Positions 164 through 8,148 of a DNA stretch of 8,849 nucleotides are shown here, one piece after another. Position numbers and translations under genes: made by a program. The DNA comes from Octopus sinensis (lineage: Eukaryota), in contig NW_021828285.1 in NCBI RefSeq assembly GCF_006345805.1, forward strand, positions 1-8,849, given 5' to 3'. How positions within the stretch are numbered: the first letter of the stretch is position 1; each line of letters opens with the position of its first letter. The notes under the pieces were generated by a model. It ran no database searches, was not told where the DNA came from, and was given only the letters and a program-made list of their open reading frames with translations.

Positions 164-455
164 ATCGACCAGGCTATCAGATGTTATATATGGATATATC
201 GCTGATCACAATGCGCTTTGCATCATTTTACTTTTCGAATGAAGCCACCCAACTGGTCAGGAAAGAAGAGGCCGACATTGCCATGAGGAGAAGGTTAGTG
301 TCTGTCACAGTGTTACCCATTTACATATGAGGGGACTGGAGCAACATGAAATGAAATGTCTTGCTCAAGAATACAACGCGCGTTCGATCTGGGAGTCAAA
401 CGGACGATCTAGCGATCGTGAGTGCAACACCCAAGCTGCTAGGTCATGTGCCCTC
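156..455 (-). mobile_element. tRNA-derived CORE-type SINE, near full length (octopus OR-like family, tail type A)
   Basis: Minus strand: tRNA-like head GAGGGCACATGACCTAGCAGCTTGGGTGTTGCACTCACGATCG with decayed B box GTTTGACTCC. Then a MIR/CORE-like block TTCTTGAGCAAGACATTTCATTTCATGTTGCTCCAGTCCCCTCATATGTAAATGGG, and a tail ending GCGCATTGTGATCAGCG…CATCTGATAGCCTGGTCGATCACGTGAT followed by (AT)n. Head and core are homologous to 2766-2890. The OR-like label is from recall. Confidence 0.85.
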
Positions 456-2765: not shown

Positions 2766-3082
2766 GTGCTCAATGGTTAGGGGATTTGGCTCACGATCGT
2801 GAGGCCGTGAGTTCAATTCCCGACCGCGCGTTGTTTTCTTGAACAAGACACTTTATTATACGCTGCTCTGGTCCACTCATCTGACAAAAATGAGGTCTAC
2901 CTGTAATTCAAAGGGACAGCCTTGTCACACTCTGTGTCACGCTGAATCTCCTTGTGAACTACATTGAGGATACGCGTGTCTGTGGAGTGCGCAGCCACTT
3001 GCATGTTTAATTTCACGAGCAGTCTTCCGTTGATTGGATCAAATGGGACCCTCGTCGTTGTAACCGACGGAGTACCAGTGCA
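2766..3082 (+). mobile_element. tRNA-derived CORE-type SINE, near full length (octopus OR-like family, tail type B)
   Basis: A-box-like GTGCTCAATGGTTAGG (2766-2781) and B box GTTCAATTC (2811-2819). CORE-like block TTCTTGAACAAGACACTTTATT…CCACTCATCTGACAAAAATGAG. Distinct tail …CAGCCTTGTCACACTCTGTGTCACGCTGAATCTCC…GACCCTCGTCGTTGTAACCGACGGAGTACCAG. Confidence 0.85.
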
Positions 3083-3201: not shown

Positions 3202-3613
3202 ACGCACAAACGTTTATGTACAGACATATAGATATGTATGTTATAATTTAAGAACATACAGTAAAAAGTTATATTATATACTATATATTATATTACTCCG
3301 TGTTTCGAATGTCGGAGCGAAGAGGTACGATACATTCTTGTCGGCTATTAATGGCAACAGACGCTATGAAAAACCGTCGAATAAAGGGGCAGTAACTCTA
3401 ATAGGTGGAAAAAGAAAAAAAGGGAAAAATACATGCAATCATATTCTCACAATACATAGACATAAACCTCTTGCGTTCACAACGTCTATATACCTACATG
3501 TACACACACACAAACATATACGTATGTACGTACTCATACATACCCGCATATCCACACACCAACACACACACGTATTATATATACATATATATACAGTGAT
3601 CACGGTGGTATAG

Positions 3614-3638
3614 ATATATATATATATATATATATATC

Positions 3639-3700
<62 letters not shown>
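3614..3700. repeat. (TA)n directly joined to (GA)n
   Basis: Read directly; the switch is at ~3666. Confidence 0.96.
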
Positions 3701-3944
3701 GTTATGAGCGGTAATGGTGTCAATAAGACCCAAAGGTGTCAGGTAGTGCTGAGTAAGTGCTATGGACAGATCATAGTTAAGCTCCAAGTTCGCTGATTAT
3801 GCGAAGGAGTCCAACGTAGGTCACACCGTCTCCGATGAAGGGATATAATAAATATCCTGGAAACAGCTGTAAGACCTTCTATTTATAAATGTTCTAAAAT
3901 CTACACAGCCTTGGTTTTTTTTTATCTCATTCTAAAAAAATTAT
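3701..3944 (+). mobile_element. Probable short non-autonomous retroelement carrying the hammerhead-like motif
   Basis: Non-coding module bounded by (GA)n and (TA)n tracts and containing the motif above. An extra hairpin TTCGC-tgattat-GCGAA (3789-3805) lies upstream. Boundaries are approximate. Confidence 0.45.
3828..3875 (+). ncRNA. Minimal type-I hammerhead-ribozyme-like motif (Penelope-like/retrozyme type) with variant core CCGAUGA
   Basis: GTCT(3828-31)-CCGATGA(3832-38)-A-GGGATAT-aataa-ATATCCT-G-GAAA(3860-63)-C-AGCT-G-TA|AGAC(3872-75). Helix I is GTCT/AGAC, helix II has 7 bp, helix III is the palindrome ACAGCTGT, and the GUA cleavage triplet is at 3869-3871. Confidence 0.65.
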
Positions 3945-4101
3945 ATATATATATGTATATATATATATAATAGAATCAAGTAAAGGTAATAAACCTCATT
4001 AAGGGATCATAAATCCAATGAAAATACTGGTTAGTTACCAGTCTATAGAAAGACCAACTATAACATAACCATATAAACCGTGGTTCATATATTTATATAT
4101 T

Positions 4102-4297
4102 TAAAGAATAAGGAGAAGATGGAGAGATAATAAAATTATTTATTAATTATAAAATGACATCTCTGATAGCTGTTTCGATTCAGAAGTCTTTAGATAATTA
4201 ATTTATAAAAATTGAACTAGCTGTCAGAGACGTTGTCATATTTTACAATTAATAAATAATTTTATAAATTATCTCTCCATTTTCTCCTTATTCTTTA
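4102..4297. mobile_element. ~195-bp foldback element (MITE-like or Penelope-derived inverted duplication)
   Basis: Left arm 4103-4171 (AAAGAATAAGGAGAAGATGGAGAGATAAT…TGACATCTCTGATAGCT) matches the reverse complement of right arm 4219-4296 apart from a few substitutions and three small indels. Spacer is ~47 nt. Confidence 0.85.
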
Positions 4298-4335
4298 TAC
4301 ATACATACATACATACATACATACATACATACACA

Positions 4336-4366
<31 letters not shown>

Positions 4367-4382
4367 CCACACACACACACCA
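4297..4382. repeat. (TACA)n then (CA)n microsatellite
   Basis: Read directly. Confidence 0.95.
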
Positions 4383-4387
4383 TATAT

Positions 4388-4568
4388 AAGGAAAGTTTAC
4401 GAAAATAACAAAAGACGAAGGCAGGTGGTGTACAAAACAAACAGATGTATTAGTATAACGCTCAGGAATAGAAAAAGTCTTTTACGTTTCGAGCCTACGC
4501 TCTTCTACAGAAAGGGACACAGAAAAAACAAGGAGAGAAAAAAATATGTGTAGTGGCTAACGATTTAT
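4388..4568 (-). mobile_element. Probable short non-autonomous retroelement carrying the second hammerhead-like motif
   Basis: Non-coding module bracketed by CA and TA/TCTA microsatellites and centred on the motif at 4479-4514. It resembles a short dispersed repeat seen in octopus sequence (recall, not searched). Confidence 0.5.
4479..4514 (-). ncRNA. Minimal type-I hammerhead-ribozyme-like motif (Penelope-like type) with variant core CUGUAGA
   Basis: Minus strand: CTTT-CTGTAGA-A-GAGC-gtag-GCTC-GAAA-CG-TA|AAAG. Helix I is CTTT/AAAG, helix II is GAGC/GCTC, helix III is the loopless palindrome ACGT, and the predicted GUA cleavage is between 4483 and 4482. Confidence 0.65.
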
Positions 4569-4577
4569 ACACAAACA

Positions 4578-4605
4578 CATATATATATTTATATGTATAT
4601 ATCTA

Positions 4606-4671
<66 letters not shown>

Positions 4672-4672
4672 A

Positions 4673-4703
<31 letters not shown>

Positions 4704-4724
4704 ATATATATATATATTATATAT

Positions 4725-4758
<34 letters not shown>
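4578..4758. repeat. (TCTA)n (~4602-4690) flanked by (TA)n
   Basis: Read directly. Confidence 0.96.
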
Positions 4759-5217: not shown

Positions 5218-5790
5218 GCACACACCACACACACACCACACACCACACACACATCCACACACACACATCCATACACACACAGCCACACACACATACACAC
5301 ACACACCACACACATCCACACACACACCACACACAATCCACACACACATCCATACACACACACCACACACACACACCACACACACATCCACACACACATC
5401 CACACACACACACATCCACACACACACAGCCACACACATATGTCCATACACACACATACACATACACATCCACACACACACACCACACACATCCACACAC
5501 ACACCACACACACATCCACACACACATCCACACACACACATCCATACACACACACCACACACACACACCACACACACATCCACACACACACACACATCCA
5601 CACACACACAGCCACACACATATGTCCATACACACACATACACATACACACCACACACTCATCCACACACACACAGCACACACCACACACACACATCCAC
5701 ACCCACATCCACACACACACACAGCCACACACACACATCACACACCACACACATATCCACACACACACACCCAAACACATGTCCATGCAC
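5218..5790. repeat. Compound (CA)n/CATC/CAC array with a higher-order ~182-bp duplication
   Basis: Marker GCCACACACATATGTCCATACACACACATACACATACAC occurs at 5429 and 5611. Confidence 0.95.
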
Positions 5791-6307: not shown

Positions 6308-6450
6308 CAGCTGGTGCAAGAGGGAAGGGGGAGAGAACTGTGGAATGCAAACTTCTACCACGTGGAGATCATCTCCCTCTCCGCTCCCCCGCCCCTCGCC
6401 TTCCAACTGCCGCAATTATAAAGCTTCATTTATGTGCGACAGCTGCCCGA
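6308..6450 (+). promoter_or_regulatory. Candidate cis-regulatory island
   Basis: GC-rich unique island with CAGCTG (6308, 6440), TGGAATG (6341, MCAT/TEAD motif), CACGTG (6359), GC box CCCCGCCC (6387) and TATAAA (6417). Motif evidence only. Confidence 0.3.
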
Positions 6451-6869: not shown

Positions 6870-7509
6870 TAAAACAGCCCCTGATATATTAAAGGAAAAT
6901 GTGACCAAAGGTCACTGAATGGCAAATACCCGAAAGAAATTATGGATTCTGATGTAGATCAAACCCTTACACATTAGTGATTGTTATGCTCTGGTCTCAA
7001 ATCAGAAATTGAAGTGTATATCATTGCTACTTTGAACCAGTCCCTTCCAGCTTGAAATTTCCAGAGTAATGTCCTGAAACATGAAAGCTGCTTATCATGC
7101 AACATATGTGGGGAGCATCCGCAGACAATCGACTGCATAATCTCTGAATGCAGCAGACCGGTACTAACAGAATACTTGCAAAGATATGGCAGGGTAGCTC
7201 TGTAATTGCATTGGTCAATATGCCGCACACACAACCTCCCTCACAAAATCAATTGGTGGGAACACAAACCACCACAAGTTGTCCAGAATGCCGAGATCGC
7301 CGTCCTTTGGAACTTCAAGGTTTAGGTTGATCGGAAAATATAGTAAAAGCGACCAGATCACATTGTGAAAAATCACATTGAAAAGACTTGTCTTCTGATT
7401 GATGTTGCAGACCCAACTGACAAAAACTCTGAAAAACGTTTGAAAAAGTGAGCAAATATAAGGTTCTGAAGATTGAAATTAGAAGAATGTGACATCTCAA
7501 AGTAACAAC
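6870..7509 (+). mobile_element. Degenerate 3' portion of an RLE-type non-LTR retrotransposon (R4/Dong-like): post-RT region, CCHC knuckle and restriction-like endonuclease
   Basis: Frame +3 reads QRSLNGKYPKEIMDSDVDQTLTH**LLCSGLKSEIEVYIIATLNQSLPA*NFQSNVLKHESCLSCNICGEHPQTIDCIISECSRPVLTEYLQRYGRVAL*LHWSICRTHNLPHKINWWEHKPPQVVQNAEIAVLWNFKV*VDRKI**KRPDHIVKNHIEKTCLLIDVADPTDKN. After a frameshift near 7440 it reads FEKVSKYKVLKIEIRRM*HLKVTT. This matches the family pattern LHG…GLKxETE…QDQ…CxxC(x8)H(x4)C…RH…HW…RPD…ID…EK..KY. Multiple stops show it is dead. Confidence 0.92.
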
Positions 7510-7641
7510 ATTATTATTATTATTATTAGGGTACTTTCGGGGTCGGTAAAATAAGTACCAGTTGAACATTGGTGTTGGTATAATCAACTTCTCACACACC
7601 CCAAATTGCTGGCCTTGTGCCATAATTCGAAGCCACTATTA
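7510..7641 (+). mobile_element. 5'-truncated copy of the second tRNA-derived SINE, preceded by (TTA)6 and inserted into the LINE fragment
   Basis: CTTTCGGGGTCGGTAAAATAAGTACCAGTTGAACATTGG…CCAAATTGCTGGCCTTGTGCC…GAAGCCACTATTATT aligns to the 3' half of the element at 7908-8148. It interrupts the LINE frame between KVTT and IIEVLGMI. Confidence 0.85.
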
Positions 7642-7900
7642 TTGAGGTACTTGGTATGATACCAAGAGGAGTAAACACATACGAAAACCAAATTCCTGGC
7701 AGCCTCAAAAGATCATGCATTTGGGCACCTCACATAAATTCTTCTCTTTGTAAATGCAGTGTTACTCACTCTGTGTTTTCTTTGTCCAACAGACATCAGT
7801 GTTTTCATTTGTATGGCACCTCACCCGTTAGCATCTTTAGATGCAAAACCTTGTTGTCCCCTGACGTCTCTGGTTGAGACTTGGGTGCAACTTGTAAAAC
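7638..7900 (+). mobile_element. Resumed C-terminus and 3' UTR of the R4/Dong-like element
   Basis: IIEVLGMIPRGVNTYENQIPGS, then after a deletion/frameshift QKIMHLGTSHKFFSL* (stop ~7752-7754). This corresponds to the typical RLE C-terminus (VIIGALG…IPG…QK…GT.H). The 3' UTR end is approximate. Confidence 0.75.
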
Positions 7901-7907
7901 TTATAGC

Positions 7908-8148
7908 AAATCTACTATAGGCACAAGTCCGGGATTTTCTACTATAGGTACAAGTCCTCGAATTTAGTGGGAGGCGGGGTAAGTCAATTGCATCAATCCC
8001 AGTGCTCAACTGGCACTTATTTCATCGACCTCGAAACAACAAAAGGCATAGTCGACCTCGGCGGTATTTGAACTTAAAATGTAAAGACATGAAATGGCGC
8101 TAAGCATTTTGTCCGGTCTACTAACGATTCTGCCAGCTCTCACCTACC
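7908..8148 (-). mobile_element. Full-length tRNA-derived SINE (second family) with a duplicated 3' end
   Basis: Minus strand: head GAGCTGGCAGAATCGTTAG (A-box-like), B box AGTTCAAATACC, central GCCGAGGTCGACTATGCC…GAGGTCGATGAAATAAGTGCCAGTTGAGCACTGG. The end GGACTTGTACCTATAGTAGA is present twice, period 27 bp (7911, 7938). Confidence 0.88.

What the first reader, a model, noticed from the sequence alone, without database searches (positions are those of the whole stretch)
3701..4568. Cluster of hammerhead-related mini-elements nested between microsatellites
Seen: within ~870 bp lie a plus-strand hammerhead module, a short unique module (3970-4095), a foldback with hammerhead 3' halves and a minus-strand hammerhead module. 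Each is separated by GA, TA or CA tracts and none encodes protein. Inference: a set of non-autonomous ribozyme-bearing retroelements that target, or generate, microsatellites and are mobilised in trans by a Penelope-like RT/GIY-YIG enzyme. This is the best candidate here for an under-described system.
Basis: inference. Interest (0 to 1): 0.7.

Follow-up and report, generated by a model that had tools for sequence, protein, structure and literature searches.

The report
Decayed Penelope-type hammerhead fragments among microsatellites
Two short, mutated copies of the minimal hammerhead ribozyme typical of Penelope-like retrotransposons, plus a foldback, lie between microsatellites in an animal genome where almost everything lies between microsatellites; this kind of retroelement debris is already described and is ordinary.

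Summary
Four non-coding islands (3701-3941, 3970-4086, 4103-4298, 4381-4568) are separated by GA, TA, ACAT/CA and TATC tracts.

Two islands carry a type I minimal hammerhead motif of the kind published for Penelope-like elements (PLEs): plus strand 3828-3875 and minus strand 4514-4479. A descriptor built from the published features finds only these two sites in the window. Shuffles give 0.007-0.013 sites.

Each motif has one substitution in the conserved core (U4>C and A6>U). No Rfam hammerhead model detects either. They are probably dead copies.

The foldback is strong (arms 81% identical, z = -17). Its "hammerhead 3' halves" are imperfect and no better than chance. Island 3970-4086 has no recognisable feature.

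Nothing here is tandem or repeated. No reverse transcriptase or GIY-YIG endonuclease lies in the window. About 35% of the window is microsatellite, and all 19 islands are bounded by it, so the flanks show no targeting.

I could not retrieve other genomic copies, because none of the collections I searched returned any related animal DNA.

Best reading: old, 5'-truncated 3' ends of PLEs or of their non-autonomous derivatives. Hammerheads in PLEs, 5' truncation, inverted copies, microsatellite bias and retrozymes are all published.

The parts
3609..3700 (.). Left flanking microsatellites, (TA)29 then (AG)18, abutting the 5' edge of module M1
   Evidence: TRF rows 3609-3666 and 3666-3700; sequence
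3701..3941 (+). Module M1: 241-bp non-coding island. It comprises 127 nt upstream of the motif, a minimal type I hammerhead motif, and a 70-nt tail after the predicted cleavage site that ends at (TA)n.
   Evidence: No other copy in the window. No ORF or Pfam hit.
3828..3875 (+). M1 hammerhead-like motif. Helix I GUCU/AGAC (3828-3831 with 3872-3875). Core CCGAUGA (3832-3838, U4>C). Bulged A at 3839. Helix II GGGAUAU/AUAUCCU, 7 bp (3840-3846 with 3852-3858), loop AAUAA. Unpaired G at 3859. GAAA 3860-3863. Palindromic helix III CAGCUG+U (3864-3870). A17 at 3871, with predicted cleavage between 3871 and 3872.
   Evidence: Descriptor hit. Coordinates checked. Homodimer through the 8-bp palindrome ACAGCUGU is favoured by -10.7 kcal/mol. 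No Rfam hit.
3942..3969 (.). (TA)14 tract at the 3' end of M1
   Evidence: TRF
3970..4086 (.). Module M2: 117-bp unique, non-coding island with no hammerhead feature and no similarity to the other modules. Identity unknown; it could be original inter-repeat DNA or an unrecognised fragment.
4087..4102 (.). TA-rich 16-mer (ATATATTT x2) between M2 and the left foldback arm
   Evidence: TRF
4103..4180 (-). Foldback left arm (M3L). Read on the minus strand it begins AAUC-GAAAC-AGCU-AU-C|AGAGA and runs 62 nt further, to the TA-rich tract.
   Evidence: Arm alignment 81% identical; blastn self-match E = 1e-36
4181..4209 (.). 29-nt AT-rich spacer (loop) of the foldback
4210..4298 (+). Foldback right arm (M3R). 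It begins AAUU-GAAC-UAGCU-GU-C|AGAGAC and runs 73 nt further, to (ACAT)n.
4299..4380 (.). (ACAT)n(AC)n tract lying between the 3' end of M3R and the 3' end of M4; the two elements point towards each other across it
   Evidence: TRF
4381..4568 (-). Module M4: roughly 188-bp non-coding island on the minus strand. It comprises about 54 nt upstream of the motif, a minimal hammerhead motif, and a 102-nt tail after the predicted cleavage site that ends at (TG)n.
   Evidence: No other copy in the window.
4479..4514 (-). M4 hammerhead-like motif, read on the minus strand. Helix I CUUU/AAAG (4514-4511 with 4482-4479). Core CUGUAGA (4510-4504, A6>U). Bulged A at 4503. Helix II GAGC/GCUC, 4 bp with G10.1-C11.1 (4502-4499 with 4494-4491), loop GUAG. 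GAAA 4490-4487. Helix III CG+U, so A15.1 to U16.1 reads ACGU, a palindrome (4486-4484). A17 at 4483.
   Evidence: Descriptor hit; coordinates checked; no Rfam hammerhead hit
4579..4758 (.). Right flanking (TATC)n/(TA)n microsatellite
   Evidence: TRF

Best explanation
The region is a small graveyard of old, 5'-truncated 3'-terminal fragments of Penelope-like retroelements (PLEs) or close derivatives of them. They come from at least two unrelated families and sit in a very microsatellite-rich animal genome.

How it would have worked (inferred from the literature, not shown here):
- A PLE transcript carries a minimal type I hammerhead in its terminal repeat, near the 3' end.
- The PLE reverse transcriptase and GIY-YIG endonuclease copy the RNA from its 3' end at a nicked target. 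Copying usually stops early, leaving only a 3' stub.
- M1 (plus strand) and M4 (minus strand) are such stubs. They keep the hammerhead and a 70-nt or 102-nt tail.
- The foldback may be an inverted pair of even shorter stubs made in one event. That assignment is weak.

Current state: each hammerhead now has one core substitution, and no partner copy is present for dimer formation. This locus should neither self-cleave nor give circular RNA. The surrounding microsatellites are the general state of this genome. They may have been the insertion target, but the window cannot show that.
For: - Two min-HHR descriptor hits, and only two, in 8849 bp on both strands. Both lie inside the finding. Shuffles give 0.013 (whole window) and 0.007 (non-SSR part), and none of 1300 shuffles gave two hits.
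- Both hits also show the published min-HHR traits that the authors list as emerging beyond their own search descriptor: an extra nucleotide between A9 and 10.1, and a palindromic 15.2-16.2 segment or loop 3. My descriptor allowed the first and required the second. M4 also has the G10.1-C11.1 pair, which my descriptor did not require. M1 has the long 7-bp helix II, and both have a 4-bp helix I (PMC4209133).
- M1 can form the predicted dimeric helix III (-10.7 kcal/mol).
- The predicted cleavage sites lie 62-102 nt from the island edge in M1, M4 and both foldback arms. This agrees with hammerhead motifs lying near PLE 3' ends (PMC8557442, Fig. 1 legend).
- The literature says most genomic min-HHRs are single motifs, 'probably related to truncated PLEs', and that pairs occur on opposite strands 100-700 bp apart.
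- PLE insertions are heavily 5'-truncated, often with an adjacent inverted truncated copy, and are biased towards (TA)n or (CA)n microsatellites.
- There is no coding capacity, no tandem unit and no repeat of any module in the window.
Against: - No Rfam hammerhead model matches either motif, even at E<=10 on short slices.
- Both cores deviate at a conserved position, so the call rests on a relaxed descriptor written after I had seen the sites.
- M1 lacks the G10.1-C11.1 pair. It has G-U plus an unpaired G instead.
- Monomer folding energies are no better than shuffles (z = -0.65 and -0.27).
- Sequence similarity between M1, M4 and the foldback arms is marginal at best (p about 0.05-0.08).
- No PLE ORF lies in the window.
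- No related copy or PLE could be retrieved, so a shared terminus with an autonomous element is unproven.
Confidence: 0.55

Rival explanations
1. One reading: M1 and M4 (and perhaps the foldback) are complete copies of short, dedicated non-autonomous hammerhead-bearing retroelements, that is solo non-LTR retrozyme or SINE-like units. They would be mobilised in trans by a PLE reverse transcriptase and GIY-YIG endonuclease.
For: - Sizes of 188-241 bp fall in the 170-400-nt range of metazoan retrozymes (PMC7229834).
- Solitary 'monomer' retrozyme copies are reported, and retrozymes resemble PLE terminal repeats (bioRxiv 10.64898/2026.07.22.740005).
- There is no ORF remnant upstream of either motif.
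Against: - No tandem arrangement and no second copy in the window.
- The motifs are of the minimal PLE type, not the canonical type I with a 6-bp helix I and loop-loop contacts that the 2020 paper ascribes to the retrozymes it describes.
- Both cores are mutated.
- Constant 5' ends cannot be shown from one copy each.
Confidence: 0.2
2. The foldback 4103-4298 is unrelated to hammerheads. It would be a miniature inverted-repeat DNA transposon, or a local palindromic duplication produced by template switching in repeat-rich DNA.
For: - The unit is about 196 bp, AT-rich, and made almost entirely of two inverted arms around a 29-nt loop.
- Neither arm passes the strict GAAA-palindrome-U-H half-motif, and that half-motif is expected about 3 times per window by chance.
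- No CUGAUGA box and no helix II lies upstream of either arm.
- Similarity to the M1 3' half is 77% over 30 nt, E = 0.3.
Against: - Both arms start at the same point with GAA(A)C-(U)AGCU-RU-C. The M1 string GAAACAGCUGU is one of the eight ancestral strings the two arms allow, given their three mismatches in this segment.
- The tails after the putative cleavage site (62 and 73 nt) are of similar length to the M1 tail (70 nt).
- No target-site duplication is evident; the flanks are ATATATTT on the left and ACAT on the right.
- Inverted 5'-truncated pairs are a known PLE insertion product.
Confidence: 0.4
3. The hammerhead resemblance is coincidental, and the islands are just unique or otherwise derived DNA left between expanding microsatellites.
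For: - No Rfam hit.
- One core mismatch in each motif.
- The descriptor was tuned after inspection.
- Folding z-scores are not significant.
Against: - Two hits against 0.007-0.013 expected, and none elsewhere even with two core mismatches allowed.
- The G10.1-C11.1 pair of M4 and the A at position 17 in both motifs were not required by the descriptor; the bulged A was allowed by it and the palindromic helix III was required.
- The two hits lie about 600 bp apart (635 nt between the two motifs).
Confidence: 0.08

Closest known systems
Minimal type I hammerhead motifs (min-HHR) of metazoan Penelope-like elements (Cervera & de la Pena 2014, PMC4209133)
   Same: - Type I topology with a 4-bp helix I.
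- Helix II long in M1 (7 bp).
- An extra nucleotide between A9 and 10.1.
- GAAA followed by a tiny palindromic helix III (ACAGCUGU, ACGU) that would pair only in a dimer.
- A U-H cleavage site.
- Occurrence as solitary motifs and on opposite strands within a few hundred bp.
   Different: - Each copy has one substitution in the conserved core (U4>C, A6>U).
- M1 lacks the G10.1-C11.1 pair.
- No PLE ORF or terminal repeat is present nearby.
- No family consensus is available, so compensatory variation could not be examined.
5'-truncated and inverted PLE insertions with microsatellite bias (Craig et al. 2021, PMC8557442)
   Same: - Short 3'-terminal stubs.
- A head-to-head inverted pair.
- Element ends abutting (TA)n and (CA)n tracts.
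   Different: - The microsatellite bias was described mainly for Naiad and Chlamys elements, which mostly lack canonical hammerheads.
- Here the SSR context is indistinguishable from the window's background.
- No target-site duplication or 30-40-bp 'tail' could be recognised.
Metazoan non-LTR retrozymes (Cervera & de la Pena 2020, PMC7229834; Li et al. 2026 bioRxiv 10.64898/2026.07.22.740005)
   Same: - Small (170-400 nt), AT-rich, non-coding units carrying a type I hammerhead.
- Thought to depend on PLE enzymes.
- Solo monomers exist.
   Different: - Retrozymes are defined by tandem repeats, and the 2020 paper ascribes canonical hammerheads to them and minimal variants to PLEs.
- Here the copies are single and non-tandem, with minimal and mutated motifs, so circular RNA cannot be produced from this locus.

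Membership tests
Hammerhead ribozyme, type I, PLE-type minimal variant | Conserved 5' core box C3-U4-G5-A6-N7-G8-A9 | tested here: not met
   M1 reads CCGAUGA (U4>C) and M4 reads CUGUAGA (A6>U). The window has no exact-core hit.
Hammerhead ribozyme, type I, PLE-type minimal variant | G12-A13-A14 followed by A15.1, and a U16.1-H17 cleavage site with H not G | tested here: met
   GAAA followed by UA in both motifs.
Hammerhead ribozyme, type I, PLE-type minimal variant | Helix II closed by G10.1-C11.1, with an extra nucleotide between A9 and 10.1 | tested here: inconclusive
   M4: bulged A, then GAGC/GCUC with the G-C closing pair, so the feature is met. M1: bulged A and 7 bp, but the closing pair is G-U with an extra unpaired G on the 3' side.
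Hammerhead ribozyme, type I, PLE-type minimal variant | Short helix I (4-5 bp) and a minimal palindromic helix III that allows a dimer | tested here: met
   Helix I is GUCU/AGAC and CUUU/AAAG. The helix III palindromes are ACAGCUGU and ACGU. Cofold gain is -10.7 and -6.4 kcal/mol.
Hammerhead ribozyme, type I, PLE-type minimal variant | Match to a curated covariance model (the hammerhead families in Rfam) | tested here: not met
   No hammerhead family at the gathering score, nor at E<=10 on the window, on the 870-nt region, or on the 81-nt and 69-nt slices. I have not checked whether the Rfam models were built from minimal PLE variants.
Hammerhead ribozyme, type I, PLE-type minimal variant | Self-cleavage activity | not testable with these tools
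   This needs in vitro transcription of monomer and dimer constructs.
Penelope-like element (autonomous) | ORF with a reverse transcriptase and a GIY-YIG endonuclease | tested here: not met
   No such ORF in the window. Pfam scan of the ten longest non-SSR frames gave nothing.
Penelope-like element (autonomous) | Pseudo-LTRs, that is partial tandem direct repeats | tested here: not met
   No direct repeats other than SSRs.
Penelope-like element (5'-truncated copy) | 3' terminus identical to that of a full-length PLE in the same genome | not testable with these tools
   No source-genome sequence came back from any collection I searched. All scans returned nothing or a chance hit.
Non-LTR retrozyme | Tandem repeats of 170-400 bp, each with a type I hammerhead | tested here: not met
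   Each module is single. TRF and repeat searches show no such period.
Non-LTR retrozyme | Multi-copy family; linear and circular RNA products | not testable with these tools
   No genome or transcriptome of the source organism is available here.
Miniature inverted-repeat transposon (foldback 4103-4298 only) | Terminal inverted repeats flanked by a target-site duplication | tested here: inconclusive
   Inverted arms are present at 81% identity. No matching duplication is seen at the two edges.

The most novel reading that the evidence does not exclude
PLE-derived hammerhead stubs are not merely found in microsatellites but help to make them. The telomerase-related PLE reverse transcriptase would add or extend short repeats at the 3' junction of each abortive insertion. 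Clusters of convergent stubs such as M1>(TA)n<M3L and M3R>(ACAT/CA)n<M4 would then be seeds of the extreme SSR load of this genome.
Probability: 0.06. Interest if true: 0.6.

Novelty: new member of a known kind. Interest (0 to 1): 0.2.

Why it matters
The practical value is for annotation. Such stubs escape Rfam and protein-based repeat masking, so PLE-derived sequence is under-counted in SSR-rich invertebrate genomes.

A genome-wide tally of these 3' ends and their flanks could test whether PLE endonucleases target microsatellites in this lineage. That bears on why some invertebrate genomes carry more than 20% SSRs (PMC7878876). This single locus adds no new principle.

Tried and rejected
1. 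Rfam at gathering and E-value thresholds on the window, the region and two short slices found no hammerhead. The only hits were sub-threshold miRNA-model matches to TA/CA repeats, and I dismissed them as low-complexity artefacts.
2. Collecting copies from sequence collections:
   - Four viral-contig scans gave 0 hits.
   - One metagenome-contig scan gave 1 hit, L001. Its flanks are unrelated, so it is a chance match.
   - Two genome-contig scans with SINE-derived patterns, run in the hope of host contamination, gave 0 hits.
3. Using spurious ORF translations as a proxy for DNA homology: a chimeric query of 11 stop-free frames from all four modules found no protein.
4. Fetching more of the same genome:
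   - The decayed retroelement ORF at 7056-7730 used as a query gave no hit.
   - Twenty window ORFs looked up by exact sequence were not in the collection.
5. Literature search for SINE strings, to name the organism, gave 0 papers.
6. A covariance model from the two motifs was abandoned. Their helix II registers differ by one column in the MAFFT alignment, and two sequences would add nothing beyond the descriptor.
7. I considered and rejected these readings:
   - tRNA genes (ARAGORN found none).
   - A pol III SINE head in M1. By eye I saw no A-box or B-box there.
   - One composite PLE insertion spanning M1 to M4. M1 and M4 converge and are unrelated in sequence.

Full report
**Layout.** The window looks like animal DNA with an extreme load of simple repeats. 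TRF tracts cover about 35% of its 8849 bp. Within 3701-4568 there are four non-repetitive islands:
- M1, 3701-3941
- M2, 3970-4086
- a foldback M3, 4103-4298
- M4, 4381-4568

They are separated by (AG)n, (TA)n, a TA-rich 16-mer, (ACAT)n(AC)n and (TATC)n. None encodes a protein. The only ORFs are read through microsatellites. A Pfam scan and a protein search with all stop-free frames of the modules found nothing.

**Hammerhead motifs.** Rfam gives no hammerhead match at the gathering score, at E<=10 for the window, for the 870-nt region, or for 81-nt and 69-nt slices around the two candidates. I therefore read the motifs by hand and scanned for them with a descriptor. It followed the published minimal hammerhead (min-HHR) of Penelope-like elements (PMC4209133).
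- M1, plus strand: GUCU-CCGAUGA-A-GGGAUAU(AAUAA)AUAUCCU-G-GAAA-CAGCUG-U-A|AGAC (3828-3875).
- M4, minus strand: CUUU-CUGUAGA-A-GAGC(GUAG)GCUC-GAAA-CG-U-A|AAAG (4514-4479).

The descriptor required:
- a core with at most one mismatch
- helix II of at least 4 bp, with optional bulges
- GAAA followed by a palindromic inner helix III
- U16.1 followed by a non-G at position 17
- helix I of at least 3 bp

It hits exactly these two sites on both strands of the window. It finds no more sites even with two core mismatches allowed.

Dinucleotide shuffles give 0.013 hits per window and 0.007 for the non-SSR part. None of 1300 shuffles gave two hits. I wrote the descriptor after seeing the sites, so these figures are optimistic.

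Both sites also show traits that the authors list as hallmarks of real min-HHRs. They have the extra nucleotide after A9 and the palindromic 15.2-16.2 segment. M1 has the long helix II, and M4 has the G10.1-C11.1 pair. My descriptor allowed the bulge and required the palindrome, so only the helix II length and the G-C pair are independent of it. M1 gains -10.7 kcal/mol as a homodimer through the 8-bp palindrome ACAGCUGU, as the dimer model expects.

**Limits of the hammerhead call.**
- Each motif has one substitution at a conserved core position: U4>C in M1 and A6>U in M4. From general knowledge of hammerhead mutagenesis, such changes strongly reduce cleavage.
- No exact-core motif exists in the window.
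- M1 has a G-U closing pair plus an unpaired G instead of G10.1-C11.1.
- Monomer folding energies are ordinary (z = -0.65 and -0.27).
- No second motif lies in the same orientation, so neither double cleavage nor dimer formation is possible at this locus.

These are best seen as dead copies.

**Foldback.** The arms 4180>4103 (minus) and 4210>4298 (plus) are 81% identical around a 29-nt spacer. As single-stranded DNA the segment folds at -54.3 kcal/mol, z = -17.

Read outward, the arms start with GAAACAGCUAUC and GAACUAGCUGUC. The M1 string GAAACAGCUGU is one of the eight ancestral strings these two arms allow. However, neither arm passes the strict half-motif, and that half-motif alone is expected about 3 times per window. 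No CUGAUGA box or helix II lies upstream. The match to M1 is 77% over 30 nt, E = 0.3.

The "hammerhead 3' halves" are therefore a plausible reading, not a demonstrated one. A miniature inverted-repeat transposon or a local palindromic duplication remains a serious alternative. No target-site duplication is visible.

**Relationships between modules.** Apart from the two arms, no pair of modules or sub-segments is significantly similar. The best pairs are M1 versus M4 (p about 0.075) and M1 versus M3L (p about 0.055). M2 has no hammerhead feature and resembles nothing else in the window. None of the modules recurs elsewhere in the window. If these are retroelement fragments, they come from different families.

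**Microsatellite context.** The window has 19 non-SSR islands with a median length of about 240 bp, and every one is bounded by SSRs. These include islands that hold other dispersed repeats:
- 2790-2883 matches 324-422 on the opposite strand at 73% identity.
- 7535-7621 matches 7947-8036 on the opposite strand at 70% identity.

Lying between microsatellites is therefore the default here. It is not evidence that these modules target or generate them.

One descriptive point stands. The predicted 3' ends face each other across SSRs: M1>(TA)n...<M3L and M3R>(ACAT/CA)n<M4. The cleavage sites lie 62-102 nt from the island edges. Both fit elements whose hammerhead sits near a fixed 3' end.

**External copies.** Pattern scans of viral, metagenomic and prokaryotic genome collections returned nothing except one chance hit, L001. 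Protein-level proxies and exact ORF look-ups also failed. None of the collections I searched returned related animal DNA. Copy number, genome-wide flank bias and a shared terminus with an autonomous PLE all remain untested.

**Comparison with what is known.**
- Cervera and de la Pena (2014) found min-HHRs in the terminal repeats of all PLEs they examined. They report thousands of solitary motifs "probably related to truncated PLEs" and pairs on opposite strands 100-700 bp apart. They also describe variants with a small palindromic helix III in flies, rotifers, shrimps and mosquitoes.
- Craig et al. (2021) describe heavy 5' truncation, adjacent inverted truncated copies, hammerhead motifs near the 3' ends, and insertion bias towards (TA)n and (CA)n.
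- Metazoan non-LTR retrozymes, and their derivation from PLE terminal repeats, are published.
- In penaeid shrimp, transposable elements including Penelope have been proposed as carriers of SSR expansion.

**Verdict.** The most likely reading (0.55) is a cluster of old, 5'-truncated PLE-type 3' ends. Two carry mutated minimal hammerheads, and an inverted pair may be a third. Solo non-autonomous units are possible (0.2). The foldback may be unrelated (0.4, for that part alone). Pure coincidence is unlikely (0.08).

Membership in the hammerhead family fails the strict core test and the Rfam test, although the architecture matches. Membership in retrozymes fails the tandem-repeat test. Membership in PLEs cannot be tested without the genome.

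Novelty: a new member of a known kind. Interest is low.

The source organism is not established. From memory only, the SINE-like repeats resemble those of cephalopods, and the SSR load also fits penaeid shrimp.

Noticed in passing
window 7056-7730 (+): A decayed retroelement reading frame in a single frame with eight in-frame stops (...CNICGEHPQTIDCIISEC...WWEHKPP...RPDHIVKN...LLIDVADPTDKN...VLGMIPRG...). From memory it resembles the C-terminal tail of a non-LTR (LINE) ORF2. It is interrupted near 7510-7650 by (ATT)6 and a SINE-like piece. It has no Pfam hit and no hit in the protein collection.
   Followed up: partly
window 2790-2883 (+) and 324-422 (-); 7535-7621 (+) and 7947-8036 (-): Two pairs of diverged dispersed repeats (73% and 70% identity) that look like tRNA-derived SINEs. 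B-box-like strings occur near 851 and 2809, but ARAGORN calls no tRNA. They also sit between microsatellites. From memory they resemble cephalopod SINEs; this is unverified.
   Followed up: partly
window 6317-6404: A GC-rich imperfect hairpin (GGGAAGGGGGAGAGAAC...CTCCCTCTCCGCTCCCCC) flanked by (CACG)n and (AGGC)n. It draws several sub-threshold miRNA-model hits (mir-483, mir-H1, mir-185), all far below the gathering scores.
   Followed up: no
whole window: About 35% of the window is simple repeat, including an 827-bp imperfect (TA)n tract (1442-2268) and a 561-bp (CA)n-like tract (5219-5779). There are 19 unique islands with a median length of about 240 bp. Many sub-threshold miRNA-family hits (mir-297, mir-3149, mir-466) are artefacts of TA/TG repeats.
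   Followed up: yes
L001 3094-3115: The only metagenome match to the 22-mer from the foldback arm (contig AUXO015636039.1). Its flanks share nothing with the window, so it is a chance match.
   Followed up: yes
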